From: Iphione sp. A-MEVVRFRX5
Lineage: Eukaryota
Direction of reading: 5' to 3'
DNA: 64,000 bases
Assembly (NCBI GenBank): GCA_976226885.1
Contig: OZ320314.1
Location: forward strand, 48,918,001 to 48,982,000
The notes beneath the pieces are model-generated. The model did no database searches, had not been told where the DNA came from, and worked only from the letters and a program-made list of their open reading frames with translations. Shown piece by piece: positions 7,081-63,345 of this stretch. How positions within the stretch are numbered: the stretch's first letter is position 1; every line of letters begins with the position of its first letter. Position numbers and translations under genes: made by a program.

Positions 7081-7164
7081 CTGGAACTCTGTTACTAGAA
7101 CATCCGTGATGCTGCCAATGACAGTGATGAAGTCGAACACGTTCCATGGATCCCGGAAATAATT
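7081..7164 (-). CDS. Cav2: Cav2 exon, IVS3 ([28 protein letters not shown])
   Basis: 84 nt; cccttttaag / gtcagc. Confidence 0.96.
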
Positions 7165-10100
7165 CTTAAAAGGGACGAAAAGTTAAAAAAAAACAAGAGA
7201 AAAGCATTAACTTGCTTCGAGAAAGGAATTATTCCTTGCATCACAAAGCCAATGCATCCTCGTTCTTTGGACACTGTATAAATACAGGTATTTGAACACC
7301 ACTTCAAAGTGTCTGAATGCTTATATTAAGAGAGATTTTTGCTCCAAAGATGCCGAAATGAAGTACTGTGACGACAAGAAAATATGAGAACTACAAATGG
7401 TGAATCGTTATTTTATAAATCACAGAGGCTATATCGTTGAATAGATGCAAGAATCGACACAAATATTTTTTTCACAGTTTCACCAAAATTTACCGGATGC
7501 CCGAATAGTTACGATAAAAAGTGAAATACAAACATGGTTAATATCGGACAAGAATATGCACCAAAGAGAAACATTTGAATCCCAACGTGCATTCAATAAC
7601 AGCACTTGACATCCAACTTCGTTTTTCGAATGAATTACATTTCCCCTCGTTTGGGAAATGTCCTTAAATTTAAAGAGAGATAGTTTTGAAAACAAATGCA
7701 GATAAGAACGCTTCCTTTTGAATGAAGGCAGGTTCAGGCAACAAAAGTTTCTGGTGAGATATTTTGATCGCGTTCTCGTGCTCATGCCGTTGAAGGTGCC
7801 ACTAGTAAAAATGTAATATTCCAAGGGCACCATGCAAGTAACAGGGTAGTGTTGGAGAGAAGATACAAACACAAGATAATTTCGGATCTCCGCTGCTTTG
7901 ACGGTACTGCGATGTCCGCAGTGACTTTGTTGTTGAGTTACATGTATATATCTACATACAATTGCAGTGAACGCAAGATCCGTCATAAATGTGATCCCTG
8001 CTTCCTCAACACAGACATATCTTTTGAACTTCAATTAAAGATCAAGTGTATATTTTAAAGTTTTTTCCCCTATTTTCAAATAATGCACACATTGAGTTAA
8101 TCTGAAATTAAACTGACACTATTCACTGTTTGGAAAGTCATTTGAACAGAAACACAGTTTCAAAAAGAATAAATGTATGTATCATTTAGCCTCCACATGA
8201 CGGATTTAAGAACTTCCTTTTGCTATGAAGTTGCACTGAATGCATTTCAAAGCGAAAAAGACATCTTTAATAATTCCTTATGGACTAGTGTCAGTTTTTA
8301 CTACCTATCAATTCACCCCACTGTACCACTGAAATAAGCTATTGAATAACATAATGAGGAGAAAGTAAATTGGTGGAAATAATGCAGTGACATACAAATA
8401 AAAAGAAAATCCACAGTTTAAGAAATGAATTGCCGCTAATTAAGTAAATACTGCGTCCCTGTATTACTATAAAAGTTGGAGCCAAATTAAAAGCGATATC
8501 TGGACAAATTAATATGGAATAAGTCACTACTGAATCATTATACAAAAACATTACTATAATAATAGGTCCCTGATAGTACAGTGGAGAGAAAAGTATACAG
8601 ATAAGATATAAGTGACTTTCACATCTAGAAATGTCGCACACTAATATGCAAATGTCTGGAATAAATCTTAGTACTGTTTCATATAATGAAACCACACAAT
8701 ATAAAGTAACTTAATTCGATACAATTTTGCGTGTCTTATAGTCACAAACATCTTCTGCTCAAGGACACTTTAACCATACCAGTGGTGAGTTGACCTTGAC
8801 GTTCCACCATAGAATAATTAATTTGGACATAATTTCCATAAATTATTTCCAAGAGACTTAACTAGTTAGGAGTGAAGAAATGAAGATAGAAAGTATCACA
8901 ATACAATAATCAAGGGAACTGTCGATCCACTTGATTTAAAACGAAACCCAAGAAGAAAGCTTGAATACCAATACGTTGAAAACAGGTAGTAACACATAAC
9001 TGTACTGCAGCTAGTATTTTGAATTCGCTTATAGACATCAAGACAATATGCAAGATGTATAGTCTCAGTGATCAATTCACCAATGGGTTGGGGTGACATA
9101 TTTACGATATCGGCAATATTACAAATAATTCGACTGGTTCTTAGGACAGCAGCCAACCTTAGGTCCGAATGCAAGTATCTTGAGGGTACATTCAAATGAG
9201 AACATCACGGTGAACGCCATGTTCATGTACTGCAAAGTTTCGCAGTACGTTTGGTATGAGACAGATCTATGCTCACTGTAGTACTGCATGTTGCAAGTTG
9301 AAAGAAAGATAAAAAACAAAGCCGAGATAAATAATGTGCAAACAGTAAAGGTAATGTATGTAACAGGCCAGCCCCAACCCGTGGCGAGTAGAAGGGTTGA
9401 ACGGGAAAGTTAGGTCCCATGATCGCCATTCAAACAGTCCGTCGCGCTGGGTTAGGGCAGGGAAAAAGGTTTCCATGGCCACAAGACCATGAACCACAAG
9501 TTCTCGTCAGATAAAAAAATGCTAACGTGTGATCCCTACCACCTGAAAGAATGCAACCATAAATTGTGGTGTAAAGCATCCATAACAAGGAATGTCTGTT
9601 CAAGACCAAAATGTTGGGCTTGTAATCGGCCAGCAGTGTGAGGCGAGGAAATAGTCTAGAACTAATGCTCCCCCCCCCCTCAAAAATTGGTGCACCTGCA
9701 TAGGAGAATATTAGGCACAGAATGTTGCAGTGGCTCTATGCAAGACTAACGCTTCTAGAATGTGTCGGGAAGGGAAAGGCATGGCGGGCAAATCAAATTC
9801 CTCTGATGCGTTCTACAGATAGCACTGCCGAGCATTCCTGTATGGCGAATGCTCGACACCACAAAATGCGGCTATTAGCAAAAAGGGACGTAAATTCTAC
9901 AGGGGACCAAACGTGTTAGTTGGTAGACAAATTGTGCAACCAGGCACAGAACAGTGTGTCTTTTTCTTACCCGTATGCCAAAGGCCAATAACTTGAGTAT
10001 ACATTCAATTGTAAAGAGTATTGTGAAGGCGGTATTAAGATATCGTAGGATGTTCTCATATGTTTCGGGCTGGCCATCAAACTGGGAGAGCAAACAAACA

Positions 10101-13100
10101 AGACAACATCAACGCAAATCAGCGTACCATAATATTGCGAAAGGTCAACGCAGATAAAAGAAAAAATGCACAAGCAATCATATTTAGCAGACGTCACATA
10201 TGTTCATAAGGCATTCCGCCTCTGGCTACAACGCGTACATCTTTTTGTTAACACCAAACCCTTTTCATTAATTTGGTTAGAGACTGGCTATCTTTTATTT
10301 TGACAAACATCTGACTTGTAAGTTCAAAATGACAATTTGTTTTGAGAGCAGGATGTAATACAGAGACCAACATTTCTATGTTTGCAGTTTTTAATATATT
10401 GTGGAAATAAATTTGCGTTTCAGTCCTTTAGTTATAGTTAGCCGAAGTAATTTCAAGGGAAACAATATATGACTTTATTTCTGTTAAATTTCATTATCAA
10501 CGTTATTTTACTTTTACATACAACAGAAATAAATGGAAATCTGGTTGGTAGGAGAGTAATATCGCCTTAAATGTAAACCCGATTCAGTAATTATGACAAT
10601 AAGGGTATGGTGTGGTAGGAAACATCGTCACATGCAAAATTATATTAAAATTGACAATAATTAATTACATAATATGTCATGCTTGGGATGATATGAAGAT
10701 CAACTCTATTGAACAGAGGCGGATTTGAACGCAGACACCAAACGTCATAAAACAACTGATCCCCTAAAAGCAAGGATTAAAGTTGATATACCTCTGTTTA
10801 CGAGTGTTATCAATCAGTGTTAGGAATTTCATTTTTTAATCAAAAGCAATATTAGATGTCAGAGATACGTATAGTGCTTGGGTAAAATTTACAAAAATTG
10901 GAACAGAACTAAAAAAAGGTTTCATCTACTCACGAAAAAGGTTACAAGATTTTACATAGGAATTGATTGATTGTGGAATTTTTCACACAGATGTAGTACT
11001 TGTCTTCTTTTAATCGGCTGTATTTCAATTTTTAATTTTTTTATGGACTGAAAGTTTTTTCTCAGGTGTACATGGTGATACATGAGGATGGTTGATAAAA
11101 CGAATAATTATTGGGGAAGGAGGTGAAGAGCTTTTCACGCAGGACATGATACAGGTAAGCCATAGGTTTAGCGAACTAATTACATGATAACATGGTATAA
11201 ATTATATGCGTTGCTTTGAATTGTGTCTAAATAACAGATGATAATGTTCATGCAGGCAATTTGGGTCACATAGATGGTGTGTCAAGTACGTGTTCCAACT
11301 AAAGCAAATGCGTAGAAAACTACTTCCATTCTCTTGTAATTGATCGTTATTTTCTGCAATTTCTTAGATTGAGAACCGTCTACGAGTGAAATTTTTTGGT
11401 AGTTATTTCTTAATTTTATCTTTGACAAATTAGTTCCCCTTACCAGGACAAAGAGAATGGATATCAAACTGAATTGTCTATGCAAAATATAAGCATGGCC
11501 TTTTATTTCTGTTGCATGGCTTTGGTAAGTATGTTCTGTATTGTTAGCCAAGACTTCCTCCATAAAAGCAATGCATAGAATTAACTTTTGAAAGAAAAAG
11601 TAGCTAAGGAACGCGTGTCTTCTTGGAATCACCAGTTAATCGTTTCTTCATTCTTTAGGATTGCTCTGATGGATTAAACTGGCTCTTTAATGTATTTCTT
11701 CATCATATTTCAACTTTGGTGGTTGCTATTTCATTTAATAACATTGGTTTTAATATTATGAGGACACAGATTATGGTATTGAATCAGACAGTTCGTTTTT
11801 GGAAAATGCACAACGGTTTTAATTTGTTACGATCATTTGACATATGCTTTCTCTGTGACCATGGGTAGAGAAAAAAGACAAATATTAATTTGAATATCGC
11901 ATGTGACTAAAATGAATTGACATTTCAAGCTGTGCATTTTCCACTAATCTATGTAATTTGTCTCTTGTTGTTTTGTATCTAGCATTTTAAACTATTTATG
12001 ATAAGAGAGAATCAATAATGAGGATTTACTTTCATTGTATTGAGCATGTAGGCCTATATGTTTATAGAAATGATGGCTTTCCGTAAAGGGAATACATTTT
12101 TCTGGGTCATGCACTTCACTTTGGAACACATGAAATGAAATGTGAAGTGTGAGTTAAAATCTTTTGTATATGGACATGCGCATTGTATTCCTCATTGTTG
12201 CTCTCTATTTATATAGCGTTTTCAGTTTTGCTAAAGTTTAACTGAGTTTTGATCAAAGAAAAAGTATCCCGTTTGGAAATTTTTACATGTATACTAGAAC
12301 CGATCGAAACGATTTTTGAATGGTTAAAAGTTGACATAAATACTAATATATTTCTATATAAAGCGGCAATGCTAACTTGCTTCCTAGCAAAGGGCTCCTT
12401 TGGGGTATCGCCGAAAGTTTCAGATACTTGTTCTTGGATTACTAGATATACACATATATATGCTTTGCCTAGATACCGTTGCTTTAAATTTTAATAGCAA
12501 CTTTGTGGCTATAGAGCGTATGGTCTTCATGTATATGACTTCAATTTCCCTTCCGCATTTGTGACAGATGTCGCGTTAGGTCATTCTATTTGTATTTATT
12601 TCATGATTATACCTAAGGCAGCTCTCCTACCTGAGGTCGCAAGCGGTACAGAGGCAAAGTTATTTATATTCTCTGACATCTACCATTAAACAGGATCAAA
12701 TATATTACAGGTATTGTGAATCATAAGATATCATCATAATCTTTACTAGTGAAATGGAATATTATATCAATGTTCTTGTCTTATGGTATTCTAGAAAATC
12801 TTTTGGATGAATAACATTTATTTCAGAAAACCATATACTTCGAAGTATATCTGATCCTGAAGAGTCTTCAGGACTTACCTTCATCATCAGGATTATTGTA
12901 TTGAGTGCGATCATAACCATTATAAAATATTCAAAAGGTGCTGAGACAACTAGCCGCCAAACCCGGTACTTGATCGAGTCCTTGTTCTTCGGCATGTATC
13001 GACACAAAGGCCTTGCATTGATTGCAAAGTCGATGCATTGTTTCTGGAAATTGGACAAACATATAAATGCTTTATCTGGCGGATATTCAACCGATGTAAT

Positions 13101-16100: not shown

Positions 16101-19100
16101 AGCGTGACAAATTAATTACTCACTACCTGCTTACATTATCTAGCTTTCATAAGGTAGTGATATTAGGGTTTTTTTTAAAAGCTTTTACTCATGCCATTCT
16201 TGACAAACACGGAGGCTTACTGGGACCATCGTGAGCATCACCCAACTTCAGTAACAACAGAAAGATATGGGAGACTGACATCATAATACACACCAGCTTT
16301 CAGTGGGACACACCATGTCACCATATACTTAACTCACGGCAAACGCAATCTGAACAGAGAGATACCTATGGAAATGATATGTTGGTTATTGGTAAAACAT
16401 AGTTTAGCTTATGCCTTTCCTAATTTAGTTTGAGAATATACGTCATAAAAATGGAAATGCAGTCCTCTTGAATGAAAGAAAGATGTAGGGAATACAGAAG
16501 ACACTTCTTGTCTTGATGTTCGATTCTAGCCTATTTAATCATCCGGGGATCCTAATAATTTAGATTATAAACCAATATATTGGTGCGACATAAGAAGGCT
16601 CTTTTCGATTTTGATTTCCAAGAAGCTTAAAAAAGTCTAAATGTTTTGTAATCCTTTAAAATATCTATAATTTCTATATTTATCGAAGGAACAATCTTGG
16701 GAAGCAAGGTAACTAAGCAGGGAAAGAGTAGAGGTAGCTTTCGGCCTTTCTAAAAAAAGTCTATACTTTAACGACTTCTTGGCATCAATTTTTCCATTAG
16801 AGCTACATCTACAACATCTAATGAGCTGGAAATAGCAGCCTAATAGTGTAGAAAGATCTTTCCCTATGGCGAATGTCTACATACTTCTATGGAATGATGT
16901 CATGGAGGAACCAAAAGCAATGGTGCACAGGACGCTAAAAGTTATGACGAGGTACGCCTACACGACCAAGGTCTTATCTTATTTAAATCTATTTAGAGGA
17001 GTCTCTTGCACAAGAAGAACATGTTCCACACGGTATCTAAACCAAGAATATTTTCCTCTGCTATATCTCTATTTCTATATGGAAATGCCTAAACACATTT
17101 CATAAACATATAAGCCTAGAGAAATGCATACAATTTGCATTGGTTTATGATAAAAAATGTGTATATCAGTAAGAATAATTTAGATATATTTGCCAAATCA
17201 TGATTTACGTTACAAAAGATGTCATCGGCACGTGTTAGAATAACTCCCGGTTTTAAGGAAATGAGTATCTTTGACTTCAATAAATAGGTGATTTTTAGAG
17301 GTCAGTTTGTGATTGTTAATCCCCATATTCACAAGAAGTTATACAAACTTAAATTAGTCTTCGAGTAGTCGACAGTGAGACATCTACCCAGATTTCTCCG
17401 TGTTACGATTAGTTTTTTTCTTAGAAAAATTAGCCTGATTAGACCTTAAATGATACTAAATGATGGAAACAGTTTACGTTAAGCATACATTAAATGAGTA
17501 AGAGCACAAATATAATGCAATAATCAGCCTTTGTAACCTTGGAAGTTCCAAAGATGATTTTGAAAAAAAATTGTGCCATAAGATGCTGAGTATCCCATGC
17601 TTTTTGCATTTTTTAAAGTTTGAGTTATAACGCATATCTCACTAATCCTCAATTCATTGCATACACTTGATATACACATTCACTAGTGCTTTTGGTGACT
17701 TGCAGTTAAGTACTGTTGTGTGGTTCATTTTTAAATAACGTAAATAATTTCACAAAAATTCAAAATGCATAAAGAAAACTGTGTCGTTTTGAATGCTTAT
17801 TGGGGCAATTTCTTGCTTTCGTTGCTACGTGAAACAAAACGTAGATGAAATTCAAACAATCAAAATAATCATTGAAGCAAGGCCATGTAAATAACCTGGA
17901 GATCTTTACATTAACAGGAAACCAGAACAAACTTGGAGACAGATTGGATGAAAAAAGGAGACAATTTCGTCATAATGTACACTGGCCCTGAGCATGGCCA
18001 CTTGATGTAGAGAACGACAACATTGGCTAATTCTTAGTTTATATATATAACAATGGTCATAAAAGTGCGCATATATAATAAAAACAAAGTCATATATGTA
18101 TGTATATATATGTAACATCTGGGCAGGGATGGTTAGGACAACTGCTGTTATTCGTCACTCCTGGGTTTATAGGAGCTTCAGGCCATTAAGGCTCACTTAC
18201 CCACAGGCTTTGCAGTTGCTATAGTAAAGCAGCAGAAATCAAAAGGATCTGATAAGAAGCGACATTAAACAATGAGGCGACAGACACAGACAAGACATTG
18301 TGGACCCGGGAAAAGGTGCATTGGATCGGGCATAGTCTACCAGAGCAATGGTAATTGCAATACAGTTTCATTGACATGGGGTTGAGATTCACACAATCAA
18401 CTTGGGAATATCTGTGCATCGTTGGTTTTCAGTGCTCCTTTCTCAGAGGCTATAACAGTATAAGTGTTAATGTGTTAGGAGACATGAAACTGTATTTCAA
18501 CCATTTAAAATCAGACACGGGCCAAGGAAGTTATTGGATATGATTACTAGTTATAAAGAAAAGCTACTAGAATGAGGGCTCAGGAAGTAGAGATGGAAGA
18601 AAAGAAGCTCACGCTGATTCGAGACGAACCATTGCACCTTTTTAAAATCCCTGGCGATCACGTGGTGAATACCTAGCATCACATGACAACCAATCATCCA
18701 ATCAAAATCATTGATAGATGAACCTATCAGCACACCATTTAGGTGACTGACTACAGTAAAACATAAGTCTTGGTCGGACGATCGGTGGGCTTTATGTGCC
18801 ATGCCCTGTCGCATATGCACTTACCATAGGATGTATTCCATTGGGGAGGCATCGTCAGGCGATTGGTATACAAAAAAATCTTCATTCAAAGTCTACAAAT
18901 TAAGCTAAATCATTCCTCACCACGCCATAAATACGTAATGATTGTGCGTTTCAAGTTAAAATTTTAACGGCTGATGAAGTGGCAACATACGGGGCAGGAG
19001 AGAGGACACTCCCACTCAACACCTGGATTACCGCCCATATTAAAATCTCAAATAATCATTGTCAATGCACATAGACGCCAAACGTAACTGAGCTGTAAGT

Positions 19101-46100: not shown

Positions 46101-47922
46101 TGTTTTTCTACAAAGCAAAGGTGGTCATTCGTTGGCTATTTAAACATTTTGGCTTTAACATGTAGATCTGTGTTAAAAAAAGTATTTTGAAGACAACTAC
46201 CGTCTTGACTACTACCACACTGACTACATGTAACAATTCGTATACTTCAACAAAAATGTGTCAATATGTACATTATTGTTGACAGACACTAGCTAGCAAA
46301 CCCAGAGACGATAAAAATAAAAATGTTACCATTGTGTATGCCGCATATGACTGAACCTCAGTGTTACTGAACATTATGACGACAACATAGGTTTTCTGTA
46401 CATGAGTAGTTCCCCAAGGAAACTGGCCGGCTACTGTGTTCTTCATCTGACCTAAATCCTGTTCTTTACCGCTTTCATGTCAAAAGGTTCAGGACAACAT
46501 ATTTTACCGTTTTATATAGATTGGTATTATAATAACTTCTGCTCTACTAGGTTATATGGAGCCATCTCCATTGTTTATAGGCATGGACCTCTTCTTTCAG
46601 TGAAAATTATAGTTGGTTTTCCATGAAAGAGATTCCTAAGAATGTCTTAAACTTAGGGAAGAGATTTAACTTCATCAACTTGAACAATGTCACAAACGAA
46701 AATTTTTGAACCTGACATACACATGCTTGGAAAATACTTAGGAAGTGCCTGGGGACTGACAGGTGGAGCCAGTTGGTACAGAACGGCTGATCCACGTCCT
46801 TTCGAGAAATGAACCCCTTCACGCCAGTTCTTTTTATGTGACACTTCTTGTTTATGTAGAAATAAGGTGTCATACTCGCCTGGGAAACCTGATCATTTTT
46901 CTATACTACTAGTGCGGCTGACACACCTTAACACAGGGCGTTTCTGTTAACTGTCAGACTTATATATTTATGGCTTGTGTACCGCAAATCGAGAGCGACA
47001 GTTCTGGGCAGGGCTCAAGGCCAGCGACATTTTTCTAGCTATCGTAGTAATAGATGGTATTTATGAACACCGTTAGGTATCTCGTTTGACGAGTTTGTGG
47101 TATTTCACGCAAACCTGCAAGGAATACGGTGAGATGAGAAAGCTAGCTCAGACTGGCTCTGCAGTATACAGCACGAAGTCAATTCTTCTTGTTGAAACCT
47201 TTCATGGTTCCAGATCAAGAGGAAAATAATAGAATATTCATTTGGATCTACAGATACAGGAATAAAGGTTGGTCAATACACTGATCAAGAGATTTCGGCA
47301 AACATCCTTAAAGTAAATACCAGATCACCCAACTTTTCATATTATTATTTGTCTATTCATGAATGTTGTAATGTGTTTAAACCATTTATCCGCAACTTAA
47401 ATTATCAGCAAAACAGTAATTTCAAGCTGAGATGAGAGAGATGTACGAGATGCGCCAACCCCATATCAACGAATAGTAGAAATAAGTAATCTCAGTTGGC
47501 TGCAATTAATACCTCCGGTAGGTAGTGAAACGTTCGCATCAGAGAGTGGAGACCTGGGCCTGTATGATTAAATACGTATAGCATGCACGTGTTAATTGAG
47601 TGAAGTAACCGTCGGCTTGTCCTTGGTCCTTTACAAGGCATAATGCATTATTTCTAGCAGTCGACACACGAGGAAGGCCTGGAAAGCGAGGGAATGATGG
47701 GGACCATGAGGGAGAGAGAGACAGAGAGACAGACAGAGAGATTAACAGAACCGTTTTACACTCCACCATCGTGTAAAAGAGGCCTCTTTCTCCTGGTTAC
47801 ACGTGATTAGTACAACCACTAGCATTCCATCTGCGGGGGTGTCTGCCCGCCGAGCAACTGTGACGTCAGCATTATTCAAACCTTATCGACAGTCTCGGCC
47901 GGTTCAAGAGGGTCGAAGCAGC

Positions 47923-47967
<45 letters not shown>

Positions 47968-53900: not shown

Positions 53901-56900
53901 CGCACTCTTGGCCATTATCCCCAGCACGGTGGTCGATCTGACAGTAGGTAATGGCGATGCCAACATCCCTATCAGAGGGCTTTACACATAATGGTATCAC
54001 GAAAGGTTGGGAGAATAATTTTGCTGAGCTGCTCGAAACTGCTCGTCGTCCTGACATTGGAGTTACTTGCTCATTTGTCATCGATAGACCCTTACGCACG
54101 ATACAATTTTCTTGAACTGAATGTGGTTCAAACCGTTTATAAAGGGAATGCTCGGTAGGAAAAGCACCACATTTTCTCCATCTAATGTGTATGCCAGCCA
54201 GGTTTTGCTCAACAGAACCAACGGAATTCGATCACACCAGGAGTGGTGGTACCGACCAATGGCGGGGCGCGCCACAATTATGTAAGAGTTCGCATCACTC
54301 ATTTTTTTGGTGTAACACGAGTGCACTAACACCGCACTAAAAATTATATTCTTTTGTTGCTTATCTATACTTAAAAAATGAAAACCCGGTGCTGAGGACT
54401 TTCACACATAGTGACATGGCAACTTTTCTACCCAAATGATCAGAAAAAAATACACTGATGAGGTTTTTGAAACAGCGGTAGCTGGTAGCGGCAAACACTT
54501 GCCCGTCGCCTTGGATATTATATCTCGAACACAATACAAGTTAGAGCTAATGGCCTAACGATGTCTGTGGTTGAGGTTCAAGGCAACCGGCCATAGAGCA
54601 TGGGTGCTCCTAGATTAAAGCTCTCGTCAAAGCTCCACCAGTGGGGCGAGACCCTCTCGGTCGCATGTGCTGTAAGCGAGCGGGCGCGGGCTTTAGCCTT
54701 CCCCCAACAAGGTGACATTATGGCGGGACCCAGTGAGCTGTGAAAATGGCATTCAGAGCATTCTGCTCTCTGCTTCCAGCAGGCCGATCCTGGTTAGCCT
54801 AGAATCTTTCATCCCCAGCCAAATTTTGCCTTTCTGGAGCCACGTGTCACCCACGTGGAAAATAACCCCAGTCGGGCGAATACGCACAGTTAACCGGGGA
54901 GTAAAAAATTTCCGAGCGCTTTCAAAAGTATGCCAGCAGCGCCAATTCATAGCCGATAGGTATGCATATGACGAAATTAAATGAAAGTAGAATTTGACAT
55001 TTGATTACTTTTTTTGTTCTTCTACGGATTGCATTTTTTGCGTTTGCATCTTACATGTATTGAATCAGGATTTGCCCCGAGTCTCACACATTTCAGTTAA
55101 CAGTACTTAGCATAGATACAAGTGCAAAATTAGTAAAGGGTTAGTGACCATTGTAGCACTTATCTATGATGTGCAGCATAATACAATTTATAAAGTGAAG
55201 TATTTTGGACAGCTTTCCTATTAGTCGTCTTAATTTTATTTGTAGGTGCGTTGTTACAAACGGCCAAGAAAGTAATCTGATAAAATTTTAGGACCTTATA
55301 AACTAGAGAAAAATAAAAATTGCATTCTTACATGATGGTAGTTAGATTTAAGGCATTCCATTTCAAATATTTGACCTTATTGAATTGATCATTCATGCCT
55401 TTAGGTATTTGTTATGAAAAATTGAGGAAAATCAAAAAAGAAATCTAAAGGCCTCAAAAATGGACATTGATGCCAAAATGCAAATTCAGTGAAGTTATAC
55501 AAAACGTATTTGGCGAAAATACGACTTGTAAAGTTTTCGCAATATTGTAATTGCCGAAATTCGACAGGTTCCAAAATACATAAAGAAGAAAATATCACAT
55601 GACAAAATTTAAATTCCCATTCCCAAACAGTCAATTGTTATCCAAAGGCAGAATCTGTATAAAGGCAAAGTGACAAAAAAATCAGATCCTCCACCTTTAA
55701 ACCTTTTTGGTCGCGTTAGGAAATCTCACAGACTTGCCAGAGAATGTAAAACAAAGAAATATAATCAATGGAATTAATAGAAAGAAAAACGAGTAGAGGG
55801 GACTAAAATTAGTGTCGGACGGTGGTTAACCAAAGACAAAAAAGGCCTTGTCTTATACGTACTTGGTATTCCCGAGACCAACTTGAGGGGTCTCAATACT
55901 CTGACGGCTCGAAGCGTTCTCAAATCAAAGTTATCTCCAGAATTCCCCCCACTAACAGACAAGGTTATAAACCTAAAAGATGGAGAAAAAAATAAGCAGG
56001 AACCTTGGTCAGGATCGGACAAAGACATCACATAGGTAATGAGCCTTTTGTAAAGGCAACATAGATTAAATCAATGATCTTCTCGTGGGTGAGGGAGTGA
56101 GGGTTCCTTCGCATCGCCTCCAAGACGTGGAGGTGGGAAGGTGAAGTGAGGACGGAGGCCTGCCTTGACCTCCAGCAAGGGGTCGCGGTAGGACGCAGAG
56201 AGGGGACGGGGTGGACTTGGGGTCCATTGCGGAGGGTTACAGCGTCCACTGCTGGTCGATGATCACTCGCTAAAAAGCATTCATCAACCAGAAACCTGAG
56301 TGACTACTTGGCAAGGTAGCGTCACACCCACAGTTGCAACGTTAATCAGAGGCAATCAGGCACACAACGTTTTTTTAAAGGAAATAGAAATGCCGATAAA
56401 ATGCCTGCTATTTCTGAAAGATAAACCGGAAACTTCATTGAAATGGTTCGATTACAATCATACAGCAACCATACCTAGTTGTCACGCAGGTGCTGTTGCA
56501 AGAAAAGGCACTTTTATTGAAAAGGGCAACGAAAATGAATTTTAAGAGGTCCAGGGAGGATCGAGGCAGTAGAGGAAATCCACCTAGACGGAGGAAAAAA
56601 AGTCGGGAGGATCACGTGAAAACAAGTTATGTGTAGAGTTGGGGTTTTAAAGAAAGACGATGATTCTTGGCTATGTAGCAGTTATGGCTTGGTAACTGGT
56701 GTGTAGAGGTATATTGTTCTCTCTCTTCATACTCACTGCAAACTTTCAATGCGCAGGAGGGTCCAGGGACACGGTCCTTTGACTATAGAAACTCCAAGCT
56801 GGCTTCGACTTCACTTTATGAGCATTTGGTTCGGTCGTTGTGTACTTGCCTGTTTTCTGTTTACTTTTAGTCATGTTGGACGCATCGTTCGAATACAGGT

Positions 56901-59900: not shown

Positions 59901-62900
59901 ACCAAGTTTCACTGAAACCATATCTTTTTTTTTGAGATTTGGAACCAAATCATGAAAATATGCCGGCTTAAATTTAGACCTTGAGATTTTGAGGCCGAGA
60001 TAGGTACACACCATGATGAGTTCTATTATACGAGTAAGGGGATCCTTCGGGGATGGGGGAATTTACCATGTACGCGACGTAATTAAGTCCCTTAAACATC
60101 ACATACATGGTGAATTCCTGAAATACAGGTATTTGAATATAAATGCCAGTCCTCGTCCCATACTAGACGATGTGCAGCATACCATGGTTTTGGATTTGTA
60201 GAAGTAACATTTTCTTACTGACGTGTTCTCTACTGAAGGGGCAGTGATAATGAATCTGTGATCCTACTTGTTCTAAAACTGGGAGGTTGGCTAACTCAAA
60301 GAGGGCCTCTATCAATTTGAATGAAATAGCTTGGAATACAATCGCACCTAATACTCCACTTACAATACGCATACGATATACACATGCACGTGTTAAGCAA
60401 CATGTGTATATGCGTAAGCATAATGAAGGATATCGCGAAAGGAACGCTTAAATTGAATTAAAATCACTATGGCAGCTAGCAAGTAGGGAACCATAAGCGC
60501 GTTAGCTTATGTTCCGCAGTGAAATGCAAACATGCATAAAGGTATATGTGTTTTGGTATATGCAATTCAATAAATGACGTTGTAGCAGCAAACGCTCACA
60601 ACCATGGCCACTTTGGCGAGAGTTTGAGAAGCACGGAATTGATCGTAAAAAGCAATGAGAGCGGTGTTATGTTGTTGATATATTGAGGTGAGAATGAAAT
60701 TAACATGGTGTTGGAATTTTCAGGAGTCTTTTAAGGAAGTATTTCATTGTCTGTAATTAGGACTAATCAGAGCTTGCCCTTGTCTTAGTGATTGTTCGAT
60801 TGGTTTCGGATAAACAAATCAATGCGTTTTCAAACTGATTCAGATTAGCGAGCGTGGATCACCGTTTGCATTGAGCGCATGCGCCAACGGAAGGAAAGCA
60901 ATCGATTTTTGTGCATTTGCGATTGTGTCCTGGGACAGCTTTTTAATTGTCGTGAAGGAAAAAGGAACTGTTTAAAGATGTGTGGCTGTGAGATGTATAT
61001 GTTTGAAAGTAAAATTAAAACTTAAAACAGGAGTAAAATATACATATATATAGTACTGCGTCCACTTGAGACAAAGGTCTGTGATCACTTACTTTCAAAC
61101 CCCGTAACCAATTTGAGGGGACGTAAAACCCTTATTGCTCTTAAGGCCGGCTGATCAAAGTTTTCACTAAATAATGCAAGTAACCTGTAGGGAATAGAAG
61201 TAGTAACAACAGACAATGTTAAACAGTCAGATTCACGTGACGAGGTCGGGCGACAAAACGGCGCCATCTGCTGGGAGAAAGAGAAAACACAAAAAGGAGA
61301 GATCATTTGAACACTACTGACAACATCTAACGGACAACATCTAAGCAGTTTAACGTCAAAGTTAACGCAAGGGACTTAAGAATTCATGACTTCTTTCTTG
61401 TTTGGAAGTGCGTGATTTCTATGTGTAAAACTTGTGACATTCGCGCATGAATTCGAAACATGTTTGTATCATTGTGATGATTTATGAAGGGCATTCAGTA
61501 CGAGAGAATGTCGGAGAATGCATTCTAATAAAAGAAAAGTGATTGGTGTCAAATAAGAGCATTTGTGAGTTTACATTCTATAAGGATATCATTTGTCATG
61601 AGCTCTTTTGCAACAACATTATCACAATATATTTCTGTGATAAGAAATAGATATGACAGTTTTTTTCTTATCCATTTGGGAACGCAGGCCAGAGGTCCAG
61701 AGGTAATGGACGAACATATTTAATTGGTAAATGAAAAGCTTTCGCTCTTCCTCTCGGGACCGGTAGCATCTTCCCAAAAGGAAAGACACTTATAATGACT
61801 AGCACGAGAGCAAACAAGATAACTACAAGCACATTCGTTTTACTTGTTGAGCCTCATTGATCCCCATGCGCAAGGTTGTAACATTAGAAGTGGAGTACTA
61901 CTCAATTTCAGTTTATACGTATGTGCTTCCAGCCATCGGCATTTGCGGAAAGTAACTGGCGTAACAAGACACCGTGACCTAGATCGGTTTAAGTGGCTTT
62001 TAGACTTAGCAGAGAGCATCTTTACTCGGTCTGAACCCGACTCAGTGAGCCTGACAAGCTTTACTTCTACTTTTGAGGATTATGTGGGAGGCCTGGTCGA
62101 TGCTGCGGTTAAATCCATGCCAAGCAACCGTCCAGGGCTTCCGAACAAAGGATACAAGTTTCAGGCAGTGACACGGACATAAATATCGGCTCTCATTCAA
62201 AAAAGGTAGAAACCAAGGTTGTAAAGAAACGCTGGCTATAATTAGACAACAAATGGCACGGCGCAACCTGAAACGGTAGCATCGAAATGTCGGCCTTGTT
62301 TGGTTCCAGGCAAATTCAAGGTAACATTTGAAGCTAAACAATTGACAGATTCCATCATAATTAAAGCAGTATGAGCATCAGCAAATCGATTACTACAGTT
62401 TCTACTGAATAATGTGTGATCTTTATAAGGTATGAAATATCAATAAATTAATTGTGTATCAATATTCTACAGTATTGATATTAACAATTAGCAAACATAG
62501 ATTACCACTATAAAGCTACGTTTTTATAATAATAATAATAAAAATCTCAGAGTAATGTTGGCTTCTACACATATATTTTGGAGAAGATAACTTATGTTTT
62601 TATTATAGAAATCCGATAAATACCGCTTAGCTATTTACTATCTATATTGAAACAAGATTATTCTACGTTTACGGTACCACTATGCCTCATCATAACGGTA
62701 GCGTAGATGAAATGGAAGCCAGCCTGATGAGCTTGTAGCTATAAAGCTGTGCACAATGCTGCAAAAATTATCACCTACCCCGTAACCACGACCACAAAAT
62801 CCATTATGTTCCAAACGTTTCGTAGGTAGGCCCCTTTGTGTAGTACAAATCCTAGTGCAACGATTTTTAATAAAGCTTCTACACAGAAAATTCCTAGGAA

Positions 62901-63345
62901 GTAAACTTCTGTTTGTTCCTGCAAAATAAATACATGTGATGGTCATTAGTAACTGTGTGATATTTGTTTCGTGGTACTGTAAAAACAACATGTTGTATCT
63001 ATTTTCAAAAGCATTAAGTGATATATAGGTTCTCATTCAATGTTTATATGAAAATAAACTTGAATAAAAAATAAAACTTGAAAAAAAAAATGAATTTCAG
63101 CGTTGCTCCTTGCTCGTGTAACGGCGGGTTTACCACATAATGAAAACCGAACAAAACTCGAACTATATTAGAACCAAGTAACACCAGTTTCCAGTGCACT
63201 TGACTCGGCAAGTCATGTTGCTGGGTAAGGTAGACTTACAAGCTGTAAGGCGAGCGGTGTTTTGTCCCCTTCCGGTAGGTGCTCCTCCAACGCCAGAACG
63301 ATGCAGTTGGCAATGATAGTGAGCAGCACCATGTACTCGAAAGGC
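7081..63345 (-). CDS. Cav2: Multi-exon gene for a voltage-gated calcium channel alpha-1 subunit, Cav2 family (co-ortholog of CACNA1A/B/E; cacophony/unc-2-like); partial at both ends
   Basis: Phase-consistent exon chain encodes S1-S6 repeats with pore motifs TMEGWT (I), TGEDWN (II), TGEGWP (III), [22 protein letters not shown] and Cav2-typical [13 protein letters not shown]. Many exon sizes match those I recall for vertebrate CACNA1A (106,140,92,153,104,116,113,113,132,73,161,202,165,111,84 nt). Confidence 0.98.
9158..9283 (-). CDS. Cav2: Cav2 alternative IVS1-S2 exon B ([42 protein letters not shown])
   Basis: 126 nt; caacatgcag / gttggc; phase 0 to 0; paralogous to exon A. Confidence 0.9.
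9971..10081 (-). CDS. Cav2: Cav2 alternative IVS1-S2 exon A ([37 protein letters not shown])
   Basis: 111 nt; tttgctctcccag / gtaaga; phase 0 to 0. Confidence 0.94.
12879..13043 (-). CDS. Cav2: Cav2 exon, III-IV linker and IVS1 ([55 protein letters not shown])
   Basis: 165 nt; aatttccag / gtaagt. Confidence 0.97.
13557..13758 (-). CDS. Cav2: Cav2 exon, IIIS6 ([67 protein letters not shown])
   Basis: 202 nt; gttgacag / gtgcaa. Confidence 0.97.
13803..14176. repeat. Degenerate minisatellite, ~42-bp unit, about 8-9 copies
   Basis: Repeated CCTGTTTCCACTACATAGTTTGCAACACTTAGTAGTATAC-like units in the intron between the domain III pore and IIIS6 exons. Confidence 0.85.
14313..14456 (-). CDS. Cav2: Cav2 exon, domain III pore ([47 protein letters not shown])
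   Basis: 144 nt; ttctttcag / gtaagt; phase 2 to 2. Confidence 0.96.
14961..15121 (-). CDS. Cav2: Cav2 exon, IIIS5 ([54 protein letters not shown])
   Basis: 161 nt; tcttttcag / gtaagt. Confidence 0.97.
15510..15612 (-). CDS. Cav2: Cav2 exon, IIIS4 ([34 protein letters not shown])
   Basis: 103 nt; gtgttacag acceptor; GC donor AAG|gcaagt, required for a phase-0 join to AVFDCVV. Confidence 0.95.
16338..16349 (-). CDS. Cav2: Candidate 12-nt microexon, IIIS3-S4 loop (LRLP)
   Basis: tatctctctgttcag|ATTGCGTTTGCC|gtgagt; phase 2 to 2; no stop. Confidence 0.55.
16700..17050 (-). mobile_element. Decayed LINE reverse-transcriptase fragment, tentative
   Basis: Minus frame [11 protein letters not shown]...FLHDII.*KYVD resembles GVPQG..LGP...NDL...YVDD; heavily mutated. 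Confidence 0.25.
18201..18218 (-). CDS. Cav2: Candidate 18-nt microexon, IIIS3-S4 loop (NCKACG)
   Basis: gatttctgctgctttactatag|CAACTGCAAAGCCTGTGG|gtaagtgag; phase 2 to 2; no stop. Confidence 0.65.
20814..20920 (-). CDS. Cav2: Cav2 exon, IIIS3 ([36 protein letters not shown])
   Basis: 107 nt; atttccag / gtaagt; phase 0 to 2. Confidence 0.97.
21580..22234 (+). mobile_element. 5'-truncated LINE (CR1/L2/Crack-like) 3' end with a (CATTGT)n tail
   Basis: ORF2 C-terminus-like text [14 protein letters not shown]...[20 protein letters not shown]...FKAQIK, then a 3'UTR, AATAAA and tandem CATTGT. The 5' boundary is approximate. Confidence 0.75.
22715..22904 (-). CDS. Cav2: Cav2 exon, IIIS1-S2 ([63 protein letters not shown])
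   Basis: 190 nt; ttattttgcag / gtacgt. Confidence 0.97.
23168..23345. mobile_element. Short Tc1/mariner-like MITE
   Basis: Imperfect TIRs CAGCGGAAAGTC / revcomp CAGTGGAAAGCC; TA on the left; internal repeated TCTCTAAT-GGGAC motifs. Confidence 0.5.
23895..24009 (-). CDS. Cav2: Cav2 exon, end of II-III linker ([39 protein letters not shown])
   Basis: 115 nt; ctttttgcag / gtgagt; conserved [17 protein letters not shown]. Confidence 0.95.
25519..25625 (-). CDS. Cav2: Cav2 exon, II-III linker ([35 protein letters not shown])
   Basis: 107 nt; tttctttcag / gtgaga; phase 2 to 1 bridges the flanking exons. Confidence 0.8.
26926..27074 (-). CDS. Cav2: Cav2 exon, II-III linker ([49 protein letters not shown])
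   Basis: 149 nt; ttcattgtag / gtaagt; phase 0 to 2; only frame that fits. Confidence 0.8.
28153..28203 (-). CDS. Cav2: Probable Cav2 exon, II-III linker ([17 protein letters not shown])
   Basis: 51 nt; aactttcag acceptor; donor CAG|gtcaac is weak, so the 3' end of the exon is uncertain; phase 0 to 0 fits its neighbours. Confidence 0.65.
28295..28303 (-). CDS. Cav2: Candidate 9-nt microexon, II-III linker (LSK)
   Basis: gtgcaacgcttcag|TTATCGAAG|gtaagt; phase 0 to 0. Confidence 0.55.
29784..29884 (-). CDS. Cav2: Cav2 exon, IIS6 end ([34 protein letters not shown])
   Basis: 101 nt; U12 branch TACCTTGAC then ctctccag; donor gtaata (alternative donor gtgagt 21 nt further on). Confidence 0.93.
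29885..30504 (-). other. U12-type GT-AG intron inside IIS6
   Basis: 5' GTATCCTTG (30496-30504); branch TACCTTGAC (29898-29906) followed by tagccctctccag. Confidence 0.9.
30505..30625 (-). CDS. Cav2: Cav2 exon, domain II pore and IIS6 ([40 protein letters not shown])
   Basis: 121 nt; attgcag acceptor; U12-type donor GTATCCTTG. Confidence 0.96.
31451..31523 (-). CDS. Cav2: Cav2 exon, domain II pore loop ([24 protein letters not shown])
   Basis: 73 nt; tctttctag / gtaggt. Confidence 0.95.
33513..33644 (-). CDS. Cav2: Cav2 exon, IIS4-S5 linker and IIS5 ([44 protein letters not shown])
   Basis: 132 nt; ttccatcag / gtaagt; phase 2 to 2. Confidence 0.97.
34332..34447 (-). CDS. Cav2: Cav2 alternative IIS3-S4 exon C ([39 protein letters not shown])
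   Basis: 116 nt; catggcag acceptor, GC donor AG|gcaagt; phase 0 to 2; intact frame. Confidence 0.85.
35168..35280 (-). CDS. Cav2: Cav2 alternative IIS3-S4 exon B ([38 protein letters not shown])
   Basis: 113 nt; ctatgacag / gtgagg; phase 0 to 2; intact frame. Confidence 0.92.
35696..35720. repeat. (GA)n microsatellite just downstream of IIS3-S4 exon A
   Basis: agagagagagagagagagagcgaga. Confidence 0.9.
35759..35871 (-). CDS. Cav2: Cav2 alternative IIS3-S4 exon A ([38 protein letters not shown])
   Basis: 113 nt; actatag / gtaagt; phase 0 to 2; closest to the canonical sequence. Confidence 0.95.
36723..36835 (-). CDS. Cav2: Cav2 exon, IIS2 ([37 protein letters not shown])
   Basis: 113 nt; tttttgcag / gtaagt; phase 1 to 0. 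Confidence 0.96.
37201..37328 (-). CDS. Cav2: Cav2 exon, IIS1 ([42 protein letters not shown])
   Basis: 128 nt; gtccatccag / gtaagt; phase 2 to 1. Confidence 0.96.
39025..39124 (-). CDS. Cav2: Cav2 exon, I-II linker ([34 protein letters not shown])
   Basis: 100 nt; tctttccag / gtactc; conserved GSPFAR motif; phase 1 to 2. Confidence 0.92.
39212..39742. repeat. Long foldback inverted repeat (~240-bp arms, ~40-nt loop)
   Basis: 39212-~39454 is the near-perfect reverse complement of ~39495-39742 (gaggccatagtctgacggttgatagcactg... / ...cagtgctatcaaccgtcagactatggcctc). Confidence 0.95.
39907..40017 (-). CDS. Cav2: Cav2 exon, I-II linker ([37 protein letters not shown])
   Basis: 111 nt; ctctacacag / gtaaga; phase 1 to 1. 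Confidence 0.9.
40200..40220 (-). CDS. Cav2: Candidate 21-nt microexon, I-II linker (GYLSTMS, next codon T)
   Basis: GATATCTCTCCACCATGAGTA; ctttctccag acceptor, gtaagg donor; frame-preserving with no stop. Confidence 0.55.
42770..42781 (-). CDS. Cav2: Candidate 12-nt microexon, I-II linker (adds ARIK, next codon S)
   Basis: CTCGCATAAAAT after a very long pyrimidine tract ending gatccag; donor gtgggt; frame-preserving with no stop. Confidence 0.5.
43542..43601 (-). CDS. Cav2: Cav2 exon, I-II linker ([20 protein letters not shown])
   Basis: 60 nt; ttttgcag / gtgagc; phase 1 to 1; EEVIL follows the AID as in other Cav2 channels. Confidence 0.93.
43747..43862 (-). CDS. Cav2: Cav2 exon, AID / beta-subunit binding site ([38 protein letters not shown])
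   Basis: 116 nt; ttttgcag / gtgagt; phase 2 to 1. Confidence 0.97.
45419..45544 (-). promoter_or_regulatory. Candidate internal promoter and first exon: CRE palindrome, TATA-like box, GC-rich leader, 5' splice site
   Basis: 14-bp palindrome CTGTGACGTCACAG (45531-45544); ATAAATA 10 nt downstream of the CRE on minus (45517-45523); (GGT/GGC)n leader; donor gtacgt at 45418. Confidence 0.35.
46018..46058. repeat. (TGTC/TC)n simple repeat
   Basis: tctgtctgtctgtctgtctctgtctgtctctctgtctct. Confidence 0.85.
47926..47978. repeat. (GA)n microsatellite
   Basis: Visible GA/GAAA run. Confidence 0.95.
49104..49207 (-). CDS. Cav2: Cav2 exon, IS6 ([35 protein letters not shown])
   Basis: 104 nt; tttcatttcag / gtaagt; read directly from the sequence (absent from the ORF track). 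Confidence 0.97.
49665..49879 (-). CDS. Cav2: Cav2 exon, domain I pore loop ([13 protein letters not shown]...[34 protein letters not shown])
   Basis: 215 nt; ttttcag / gtgagt; contains the domain I selectivity glutamate. Confidence 0.96.
50488..50640 (-). CDS. Cav2: Cav2 exon, IS5 ([50 protein letters not shown])
   Basis: 153 nt; ttccttgcag / gtaaca; phase 1 to 1. Confidence 0.97.
53645..53690. repeat. (CT/CCCT)n simple repeat
   Basis: ctctctccctctctttctccctccctccctccctctctctctc. Confidence 0.85.
55863..55972 (-). CDS. Cav2: Cav2 alternative IS4 exon B ([37 protein letters not shown])
   Basis: 110 nt; tcttttag acceptor, gtacgt donor; phase 2 to 1; canonical IS4. Confidence 0.96.
58112..58453. 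mobile_element. Non-autonomous TIR element (Harbinger-like MITE)
   Basis: Ends GGCCCCGTTCAAATACAACCGGA / revcomp AGCCCCTCTCACATACAACCGGA; internal inverted repeat gggttcacattctgtgt...acacagaatgtgaaccc and a short tandem duplication. Confidence 0.55.
61093..61184 (-). CDS. Cav2: Cav2 alternative IS4 exon A ([31 protein letters not shown])
   Basis: 92 nt; ctattccctacag acceptor, gtaagt donor; phase 2 to 1; open frame with an S4 pattern. Confidence 0.88.
61790..62330 (+). mobile_element. Decayed LINE ORF2 fragment (endonuclease-RT linker), tentative
   Basis: Interrupted text resembling TR.N..., F.STF...LVD...P and ISALIQKR*K; multiple stops; similarity judged by eye only. Confidence 0.3.
62779..62918 (-). 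CDS. Cav2: Cav2 exon, IS2-IS3 ([47 protein letters not shown])
   Basis: 140 nt; ttttgcag acceptor, gtaggt donor; phase 0 to 2. Confidence 0.97.
63240..63345 (-). CDS. Cav2: Cav2 exon, IS1 ([35 protein letters not shown])
   Basis: 106 nt; preceded by a non-canonical AC acceptor with a U12 branch site; donor gtaagt. Confidence 0.95.

What the first reader, a model, noticed from the sequence alone, without database searches (positions are those of the whole stretch)
7081..63345. Combinatorial exon-swap system tuning several voltage sensors of one Cav2 channel
Seen: three separate tandem duplicate-exon clusters (IS4 x2, IIS3-S4 x3, IVS1-S2 x2), giving 12 combinations. Candidate microexons add three states in the I-II linker, two in II-III and four in IIIS3-S4, for an arithmetic upper bound of 288 isoforms from this window alone. 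Established: Drosophila cacophony has mutually exclusive IS4 exons, and vertebrate Cav2 genes have S3-S4 microexons. I am not aware of a three-way IIS3-S4 array in a Cav2 gene. Inference: a single-copy invertebrate Cav2 may generate P/Q/N/R-like diversity by splicing instead of gene duplication.
Basis: partly seen in the sequence, partly recalled or inferred. Interest (0 to 1): 0.8.

Follow-up and report, generated by a model that had tools for sequence, protein, structure and literature searches.

The report
Alternative voltage-sensor exons in worm Cav2
A presynaptic-type (Cav2) calcium-channel gene of an annelid-like invertebrate has intact duplicate exons for parts of three of its four voltage sensors; two of these sites are old and already recorded in other animals, while the three-copy set in domain II appears undescribed, and no RNA data were available to show how the copies are used.

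Summary
A Cav2 alpha-1 gene lies on the minus strand, from IS1 to IVS3. It has two IS4 exons (92 and 110 nt), three IIS3-S4 exons (113, 113 and 116 nt) and two IVS1-S2 exons (111 and 126 nt). All are open, in matching phase and have splice sites.

Related genomes keep the copies with the same lengths and splice sites, including a GC donor on the last IIS3-S4 copy. Introns are otherwise unalignable. Every copy changes far less at replacement sites than at silent sites, so these are coding exons, not relics.

Including two copies gives a stop codon in domains I and II, but not in domain IV.

- **IS4:** the pair is old. It also occurs in a bivalve, gastropods, flatworms and a crinoid, where it appears as annotated isoforms.
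- **IVS1-S2:** the pair was published for molluscs (Dunn 2018).
- **IIS3-S4:** the array appears only in this lineage. It is absent from a leech, from an oyster relative and from about 180 near-full-length homologues (nearly all Cav2).

No sequencing run was listed, so one-at-a-time use, free combination, the microexons and the 288 figure are all untested. Other notes of this scan report similar exon pairs in other genes of this genome.

The parts
63240..63344 (-). IS1 exon ([35 protein letters not shown]). The upstream boundary was not fixed.
   Evidence: tblastn with Crassostrea P0014 and Schistosoma P0016
62779..62918 (-). Constitutive IS2-S3 exon. It ends 2 bases into a codon.
   Evidence: Best matches are human Cav2.2/2.3/2.1. 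Splice context and in-silico joining give an open frame.
61093..61184 (-). IS4a alternative exon, 92 nt: [30 protein letters not shown]. Proline sits at the position of gating charge R1.
   Evidence: AG acceptor and GTAAGT donor. Aligns to Cav2.2 residues 179-206 with QP over LR. 97% aa identity in relative L001, same length and sites. The exon's 3' part and about 50 nt of downstream intron are nearly invariant.
55863..55972 (-). IS4b alternative exon, 110 nt, with the canonical S4: [22 protein letters not shown].
   Evidence: Splice sites. 86% aa identity in L001, same length; replacement-site difference (pN) 0.077 vs silent-site difference (pS) 0.39.
51924..51989 (-). Conserved intronic island between IS4b and the next exon, with three TGCATG (Rbfox-type) words. 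Candidate splicing regulator.
   Evidence: blastn island, 79% identity to L001 in an otherwise unalignable intron. Sequence shown, two TGCATG kept in L001.
50488..50640 (-). Constitutive IS4-S5 exon.
41653..42831 (-). Two conserved islands in the I-II-linker intron (42831-42714 and 41741-41653) sharing the core ATAAARTGTGGGTAT. Undecided whether exon or regulatory element.
   Evidence: The encoded RIKCGY peptide is absent from 360 proteins in hand.
36723..36835 (-). Constitutive IIS2-S3 exon.
   Evidence: 95% nt identity to L003.
35759..35871 (-). IIS3-S4 exon A, 113 nt, canonical type: [37 protein letters not shown].
   Evidence: Splice sites. Aligns to Cav2.2 residues 553-589. 95% aa identity to L003; pN 0.05 vs pS 0.59, p=5e-9.
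35168..35280 (-). IIS3-S4 exon B, 113 nt: [37 protein letters not shown].
   Evidence: Splice sites. Ortholog in L003 has the same length, 78% aa identity; pN 0.12 vs pS 0.71, p=1e-8.
34332..34447 (-). IIS3-S4 exon C, 116 nt, with a GC donor: [38 protein letters not shown].
   Evidence: AG acceptor and AAG|GCAAGT donor, also kept in L003. 63% aa identity; pN 0.27 vs pS 0.74, p=5e-6.
33513..33644 (-). Constitutive IIS4-S5 exon.
18201..18218 (-). Candidate 18-nt microexon (inserts NCKACG) in the IIIS3-S4 loop. Unverified.
   Evidence: Good acceptor and GTAAGT donor, in frame. No match in L007 or L008. Cassettes at this site are known in Aplysia, Crassostrea and vertebrates.
12879..13043 (-). Constitutive exon for the III-IV linker and IVS1. 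Ends in phase 0.
9971..10081 (-). IVS1-S2 exon A, 111 nt, phase 0-0: [37 protein letters not shown].
   Evidence: Splice sites. Kept at 111 nt in L006, L007 and L008. pN 0.11 vs pS about 0.6.
9158..9283 (-). IVS1-S2 exon B, 126 nt, phase 0-0: [42 protein letters not shown].
   Evidence: Splice sites. Kept at 126 nt in L006 and L007. pN 0.24-0.27 vs pS 0.59-0.71. Absent from L008.
7081..7164 (-). Constitutive IVS2-S3 exon ([28 protein letters not shown]).

Best explanation
This is one Cav2 (N/P/Q/R-type) calcium-channel alpha-1 gene with three sites of tandem-duplicated alternative exons. At each site the mature mRNA most likely carries exactly one copy.

- **Domain I.** The choice is between a canonical S4 (IS4b) and an S4 lacking the outermost gating charge (IS4a, proline at R1). 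This probably shifts the voltage range or steepness of activation, because sensor I tracks pore opening in Cav2.2.
- **Domain II.** The three copies keep all S4 charges and the S3 glutamate. They swap the outer end of S3 and the S3-S4 linker: charged in A, His/Asp in B, uncharged and one residue longer in C. They therefore change the outward-facing paddle of sensor II.
- **Domain IV.** The two copies swap the S1-S2 loop (five residues longer, with a cysteine, in B) and the surface of S2.

One-at-a-time use is enforced by reading frame, presumably followed by nonsense-mediated decay, in domains I and II. In domain IV it can come only from splicing regulation.

Copy A is probably the default. 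It is the canonical sequence, has the consensus donor and is the best conserved. B and C are probably regulated choices, and the conserved weak GC donor of the last copy fits that.

Shown: the anatomy, the frames, conservation and purifying selection, and the use of the IS4 and IVS1-S2 alternatives in annotated isoforms of other phyla.

Inferred: expression and exclusivity in this species, any effect on gating, and which factors choose the exon.
For: - **Cav2 identity:**. The AID motif and the pore glutamates of domains I-III are in the exons.
- **Anatomy:** exact exons and splice sites; frames.
- **Relative L001-L003 (Logan contigs):** IS4a, IS4b and A, B, C lie in the same order, with the same lengths and the same donor types, while introns do not align.
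- **Relatives L006 and L007:** both IVS1-S2 copies at 111 and 126 nt. L007 also has two IIS3-S4 copies, the second with a GC donor.
- **Selection:** replacement-site differences (pN) are far below silent-site differences (pS) for every copy, Fisher p 2.5e-2 to 5e-9.
- **Use of the alternatives elsewhere:** Antedon isoform X5 carries the IS4a type and the other 16 isoforms the IS4b type. Crassostrea virginica X14 and a C. angulata isoform carry the other IVS1-S2 exon. Dunn 2018 reports this as a mutually exclusive pair from transcriptome data.
- **Pinctada genome:** IS4a and IS4b in tandem, and two IVS1-S2 exons.
- **Function of the fly IS4 pair:** the exon choice changes activation voltage and synaptic localisation.
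Against: - There is no RNA evidence for this species or its close relatives. No sequencing run was listed, and all fragmentary hits were genomic read-through frames.
- No B- or C-type IIS3-S4 sequence occurs in any of the roughly 180 near-full-length homologues in hand (nearly all Cav2).
- A word search with exon C found nothing, though that search was length-limited.
- In mammalian Cav2.2, sensor II gave no voltage response, so a gating effect of the A/B/C choice is uncertain.
- I found no conserved docking/selector RNA structure or local fold that would explain exon choice.
- The selection tests rest on only 30-42 codons each.
Confidence: 0.75

Rival explanations
1. One reading: the three clusters and several microexons are spliced independently, so the gene yields up to 12 to 288 isoforms that replace the vertebrate P/Q/N/R gene family.
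For: The seven exon copies are intact. A plausible microexon lies at 18218-18201. Cassette exons at the I-II linker and IIIS3-S4 are known in Aplysia. Many annotated isoforms exist in oysters and Antedon.
Against: Nothing here shows independence between the sites, or the use of any microexon. The conserved islands in the I-II-linker intron do not behave as clean 3n exons, and their peptide is absent from known Cav2 proteins. Copy number of Cav2 in this genome is untested, and one foreign assembly has two Cav2 loci.
Confidence: 0.15
2. The extra copies (IIS3-S4 B and C above all) are decaying duplicates that are never spliced in.
For: No annotated protein carries a B or C type. C has a non-canonical GC donor and is the least conserved copy (63% aa identity). 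A leech and a bivalve manage with one exon.
Against: Between two species whose introns no longer align, B and C keep exact length, open frame, the AG acceptor and the same donor type, including the GC donor. Replacement-site to silent-site difference ratios (pN/pS) are 0.17 and 0.36, p=1e-8 and 5e-6. All S4 charges and the S3 glutamate are kept.
Confidence: 0.07
3. The duplicates are an assembly artefact, such as uncollapsed haplotypes or a local mis-join.
For: None beyond the general possibility.
Against: The copies are only 55-70% identical in protein. The same arrays occur in independent assemblies from other samples.
Confidence: 0.01

Closest known systems
Drosophila cacophony IS4A/IS4B mutually exclusive exons (Bell et al. 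2025, PMC11828482; PMC12370356)
   Same: A single invertebrate Cav2 gene with two tandem exons for S4 of domain I. The two differ by one positive charge. In the fly the choice changes activation voltage and synaptic localisation.
   Different: The fly exons are both 99 nt and both keep R1. The extra charge sits in the upstream exon. Here the exons are 92 and 110 nt, and the upstream exon lacks R1 (proline). This QPA type is shared with molluscs, flatworms, an orthonectid and a crinoid, not with flies.
Mollusc Cav2 domain IV (IVS2) mutually exclusive pair (Dunn et al. 2018, PMC5818475)
   Same: Same position: the S1-S2 loop plus S2 of domain IV. Two alternative obligate exons, seen in Aplysia, Crassostrea and Octopus transcripts and in the Pinctada genome.
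   Different: One-to-one orthology of the copies with the mollusc copies is unclear. The order and the loop lengths differ.
S3-S4 mutually exclusive exons of sodium channels: vertebrate SCN exon 5a/5b (IS3-S4; PMC12772994), and four exons 27A-D for IIIS3-S4 in the Liposcelis para gene (PMC3805903)
   Same: Tandem copies of the exon for the end of S3, the linker and S4 of one domain of a four-domain channel, in arrays of two to four (abstracts).
   Different: A different gene family and different domains. The function of the array here is untested, and I found no conserved intronic RNA structure.
Vertebrate Cav2 S3-S4 cassette exons (e24a in IIIS3-S4, cited in Dunn 2018 Table 1; e31a in IVS3-S4, from my own knowledge)
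   Same: They vary the extracellular S3-S4 linker of a Cav2 voltage sensor without touching the gating charges.
   Different: Those are short optional inserts in domains III and IV. Here whole exons are substituted in domain II.

Membership tests
Cav2 (non-L-type high-voltage-activated) calcium channel alpha-1 subunit | Closer in sequence to Cav2.1/2.2/2.3 than to Cav1 or Cav3 | tested here: met
   IS2-S3 exon: E 3e-36 to 2e-33 for Cav2.x against about 1e-21 to 1e-23 for Cav1 and 1e-15 for Cav3. Only Cav2 chains match the IIS3-S4 and IS4 exons. The best full-length relatives are named 'type A subunit alpha-1'.
Cav2 (non-L-type high-voltage-activated) calcium channel alpha-1 subunit | Four homologous six-helix domains with glutamates in the pore loops (EEEE) | tested here: inconclusive
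   Domains I-III and IVS1-S3 lie in the window. The pore motifs TMEGW, TGEDW and TGEGW are present. The domain IV pore and the C-terminus lie outside the window.
Cav2 (non-L-type high-voltage-activated) calcium channel alpha-1 subunit | Beta-subunit binding motif (AID) in the I-II linker | tested here: met
   Exon 43861-43742 encodes [15 protein letters not shown], 80% identical to oyster Cav2.
Tandem-duplicated mutually exclusive exon cluster | Adjacent homologous exons of like length and identical phase, each with its own splice sites and an open frame | tested here: met
Tandem-duplicated mutually exclusive exon cluster | Each copy kept by purifying selection in other species | tested here: met
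   Same lengths and splice sites in L001, L003, L006 and L007. Replacement-site differences (pN) are well below silent-site differences (pS) for all seven copies.
Tandem-duplicated mutually exclusive exon cluster | Joint inclusion or joint skipping is incompatible with the reading frame | tested here: met
   IS4 (92 and 110 nt) and IIS3-S4 (113, 113 and 116 nt) are all 2 mod 3. Any two or three copies together give a stop. Not met for IVS1-S2 (111 and 126 nt, A+B stays open); there exclusivity must be regulated.
Tandem-duplicated mutually exclusive exon cluster | Transcripts carry exactly one copy | not testable with these tools
   No run was listed for this DNA. In other phyla, annotated isoforms carry one or the other at IS4 (Antedon) and at IVS1-S2 (oysters; Dunn 2018). 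There is nothing for IIS3-S4.
Drosophila cac IS4A/IS4B pair (orthology) | Same two sequence types as the fly exons | tested here: not met
   Fly exons read [23 protein letters not shown] and [23 protein letters not shown], and both keep R1. The [22 protein letters not shown] type is absent from the fly isoforms in hand.
Docking-site/selector (competing RNA structure) control, as in Dscam and related genes | Conserved complementary intronic elements, one shared and one per variable exon | tested here: inconclusive
   Inverted-repeat scans of the IIS3-S4 cluster in the window and in L003 gave only short, non-homologous pairs. The invariant block at IS4a folds no better than shuffles. Long-range pairing was not searched exhaustively.

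The most novel reading that the evidence does not exclude
The lineage-specific three-way IIS3-S4 array gives this Cav2 channel switchable versions of voltage sensor II, the sensor that is locked down and voltage-insensitive in mammalian Cav2.2. Under this reading, the B or C paddle would free, re-lock or re-couple sensor II, or alter a partner or toxin site. Together with the ancient R1-less IS4a exon, it would form a natural isoform series for asking what sensor II does in Cav2 channels.
Probability: 0.2. Interest if true: 0.7.

Novelty: new member of a known kind. Interest (0 to 1): 0.5.

Why it matters
Most invertebrates are thought to run transmitter release with a single Cav2 gene. How they obtain different channel behaviours is an active question, tested so far only in the fly.

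This locus shows three things:
1. An IS4 exon lacking the first gating charge is an old, widely kept alternative in Bilateria. It is distinct from the fly pair.
2. The domain IV pair known from molluscs extends to this annelid-like lineage.
3. A further, younger array has arisen in domain II, whose voltage sensor is functionally puzzling in mammals.

The three domain II exons are ready-made natural variants for expression and voltage-clamp fluorometry. The kind of system, tandem alternative exons in voltage sensors, is well known, so this extends existing knowledge and does not overturn it.

Tried and rejected
- **RNA evidence.** Two run searches, one on the 4-kb cluster region and one on a 225-nt pure exon, listed no run. 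So read laying could not be used.
- **Word search with exon C.** Querying its 126-aa open frame found nothing. This is uninformative because of the length filter.
- **Spliced transcripts among fragment hits.** The 72 fragment hits to the III-IV exon were checked for spliced forms. All but the flatworm gene models are genomic read-through frames.
- **Crassostrea virginica gene DNA.** It could not be fetched: the product is not on record.
- **Docking/selector RNA pairing in the IIS3-S4 cluster.** Only short pairs, not conserved.
- **Local fold at the invariant IS4a block.** z-scores 0.39 and -0.18.
- **Islands at 42.7 and 41.7 kb as I-II-linker microexons.** No shared donor gives a 3n exon, and their peptide is absent from known Cav2 proteins. 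Left undecided.
- **Conservation of the 18-nt microexon in L007 and L008.** None found.
- **Earlier findings by sequence and by 'Cav2' words.** Nothing returned.
- **Pseudo-exon and assembly-artefact readings.** Rejected on conservation and selection.

Full report
**What is in the window.** The window is AT-rich (about 38% G+C) with no gaps. A comparison of all stop-to-stop frames against each other showed that the coding signal is on the minus strand. It also showed three groups of mutually similar short frames: 61.1 kb against 55.9 kb; 35.8, 35.2 and 34.4 kb; and 10.0 against 9.2 kb.

The IS2-S3 exon matches human Cav2.2, Cav2.3 and Cav2.1 at E 3e-36 to 2e-33, against about 1e-21 to 1e-23 for L-type and 1e-15 for T-type channels. 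Pfam places the repeated pieces at S1-S2 or S3-S4 positions of the Ion_trans model. tblastn with full-length relatives (oyster XP_078326088 and Schistosoma KAH8859404, obtained) lays out the gene from IS1 (63344) to IVS2-S3 (7081). The layout includes the beta-subunit binding motif and the pore glutamates of domains I-III.

**The three clusters.** I read the DNA at each copy and joined exons in silico, which fixes the exons as follows.

| Site | Copy | Coordinates | Length |
|---|---|---|---|
| IS4 | a | 61184-61093 | 92 nt |
| IS4 | b | 55972-55863 | 110 nt |
| IIS3-S4 | A | 35871-35759 | 113 nt |
| IIS3-S4 | B | 35280-35168 | 113 nt |
| IIS3-S4 | C | 34447-34332 | 116 nt |
| IVS1-S2 | A | 10081-9971 | 111 nt |
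| IVS1-S2 | B | 9283-9158 | 126 nt |

- Every copy follows an AG. Every copy precedes a GT, except C, whose donor is AAG|GCAAGT, the usual form of a GC donor.
- Each single copy gives an open frame with its neighbours.
- In domains I and II all lengths are 2 mod 3. Skipping shifts the frame, and any two or three copies together run into a stop inside the second copy.
- A sensitive search finds no further copies.

**Are the extra copies real exons?** No sequencing run could be listed for this DNA, so I used comparative genomics.

The library search with the domain I pore-loop exon gave a fragment from a Logan contig. Fetching that contig and walking along it gave a related genome (L001-L005). 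Its exons are 77-95% identical in DNA to the window, while its introns do not align.

- That relative has IS4a and IS4b, and A, B and C in the same order.
- The lengths are identical (92, 110; 113, 113, 116), with AG acceptors and the same donor types, including GCAAGT after C.

A second route, through the III-IV-linker exon, gave three more loci.

- L006 and L007 each have both IVS1-S2 exons, at 111 and 126 nt.
- L007 also has two IIS3-S4 exons, of 113 and 110 nt, the second again with a GC donor.
- L008 has only the A-type IVS1-S2 exon.

Nei-Gojobori counts show replacement-site differences (pN) far below silent-site differences (pS) for each copy.

| Copy | pN | pS | Fisher p |
|---|---|---|---|
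| IIS3-S4 A | 0.05 | 0.59 | 5e-9 |
| IIS3-S4 B | 0.12 | 0.71 | 1e-8 |
| IIS3-S4 C | 0.27 | 0.74 | 5e-6 |
| IS4a | 0.03 | 0.19 | 0.025 |
| IS4b | 0.08 | 0.39 | 3e-4 |
| IVS1-S2 A | 0.11 | about 0.6 | 1e-6 to 6e-6 |
| IVS1-S2 B | 0.24-0.27 | 0.59-0.71 | 1e-5 to 2e-3 |

These are small samples (30-42 codons each). Even so, together with the kept lengths and splice sites they exclude decaying relics and assembly artefacts.

**How old and how widespread each cluster is.**

*IS4.*
- The upstream exon encodes [22 protein letters not shown]. It aligns to human Cav2.2 IS4 with QP over the first LR, so gating charge R1 is replaced by proline.
- The same type occurs in proteins of Schistosoma, Heterobilharzia, Aplysia, Bulinus, Pinctada, the orthonectid Intoshia, and in isoform X5 of the crinoid Antedon. 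Antedon's other 16 isoforms carry the canonical type.
- The Pinctada gene has both exons in tandem, in the same order as here.
- The pair is therefore probably as old as Bilateria.
- It is not the fly pair. Both fly exons keep R1 and differ elsewhere. In the fly the upstream exon has the extra charge.

*IVS1-S2.*
- Dunn et al. [quoted passage not shown] They also describe cassettes in the I-II linker, IIIS3-S4 and the C-terminus.
- I see the two forms among oyster isoforms and two exons in the Pinctada gene.
- The B type here is closest to the form annotated in flatworms.

*IIS3-S4.*
- All of the roughly 180 near-full-length homologues in hand (nearly all Cav2) carry only the A type. These include 20 oyster, 17 Antedon and several Octopus isoforms.
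- The Helobdella and Pinctada genes each have a single 113-nt exon with a GT donor.
- The held literature returned nothing on IIS3-S4 splicing in Cav2.
- The array is therefore confined, as far as I can see, to the lineage of the window, its close relative (three copies) and L007 (two copies).
- Identity between copies groups A with A (89-95%), B with B (78%) and C with C (63%). So the duplications predate the split of the window species from its close relative.
- Other notes of this scan call the genome annelid-like. I did not test this directly. Overall identity to mollusc, leech and flatworm Cav2 is similar, at 67-74%.

**What the alternatives change.**
- The IS4 choice removes or keeps R1. 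In Cav2.2, sensor I activation tracks pore opening, and in the fly the IS4 choice shifts activation voltage. A gating effect is therefore likely, though it is an inference.
- The three IIS3-S4 copies keep the S3 glutamate and the R-R-R-K ladder. They differ at the outer end of S3 and in the linker: SEFKVDSS in A, QVFIPHDS in [10 protein letters not shown] (one residue longer) in C.
- In mammalian Cav2.2, sensor II gave no fluorescence response to voltage and is seen in the down state in structures. So the array may not tune voltage sensing in the ordinary sense. What it does is open, and this is the most interesting point of the locus.
- The IVS1-S2 copies keep the S2 phenylalanine, glutamate and lysine. 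They differ in loop length and in a cysteine.

**How the choice may be made.**
- Frame plus nonsense-mediated decay can police domains I and II. Domain IV needs regulation.
- The introns between copies are 478-5120 nt long, so steric exclusion is unlikely. The splice sites are all of the major type.
- I found no conserved complementary elements.
- Several features do point to regulation:
  - the conserved GC donor of the last IIS3-S4 copy;
  - an almost invariant block covering the 3' part of IS4a and about 50 nt of its downstream intron, which local folding does not explain;
  - a conserved island with TGCATG words between IS4b and the next exon.

**What remains unsupported.** Independent, combinatorial use, the microexon states and the 288 bound have no evidence beyond plausible splice sites at 18218-18201. 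'Single-copy' is untested, and one foreign assembly holds two distinct Cav2 loci. The general idea that a lone invertebrate Cav2 gene diversifies by splicing is already in the literature.

**Verdict.** This is a new member of a known kind. It contains one apparently undescribed element, the IIS3-S4 array, and one under-appreciated ancient element, the R1-less IS4 exon.

Noticed in passing
window 39212-39742: A near-perfect inverted repeat in the intron between two I-II-linker exons. Arms are 39212-39420 and 39534-39742: 209 nt, 99% complementary, with a 113-nt loop. The orthologous intron in relative L003 is only about 186 nt, so this is a recent foldback or MITE-like insertion. It would form a long double-stranded hairpin in the pre-mRNA.
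   Followed up: partly
window 61030-61150: The 3' 60 nt of exon IS4a and about 50 nt of the following intron are almost invariant between the window and L001. Silent-site difference (pS) is 0.19, against 0.39-0.74 for the other alternative exons. Local RNA folding is no better than shuffles.
   Followed up: partly
window 42714-42831 and 41653-41741: Two conserved islands in the I-II-linker intron share the core ATAAARTGTGGGTAT and an open RIKCGY frame in both species. No such peptide occurs in 360 proteins in hand. Undecided whether exon or regulatory element.
   Followed up: partly
window 51924-51989: A conserved intronic island with three TGCATG words on the gene strand, two of them kept in L001. 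TGCATG occurs 35 times on the gene strand, against about 14 expected from a simple shuffle.
   Followed up: partly
window 28172-28218: A conserved acceptor and the start of a II-III-linker exon ([17 protein letters not shown]) are shared with L003. Whether the exon is constitutive or a cassette is unknown.
   Followed up: no
window 13856-14175: A 43-nt tandem repeat, 7.4 copies, 70% matches, in the intron between the domain III pore-loop exon and the IIIS6 exon.
   Followed up: no
L006 and L007 (ENA assembly ERZ25070786): One assembly holds two different Cav2 loci, 92% and 82% identical to the window on the III-IV-linker exon. Both have the IVS1-S2 pair. Two species or two paralogues: not resolved.
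   Followed up: no
P0242 (Globodera pallida protein): The predicted protein contains the same IIS3-S4 stretch twice (residues 447 and 794, identical). This is probably a gene-model or assembly duplication.
   Followed up: no
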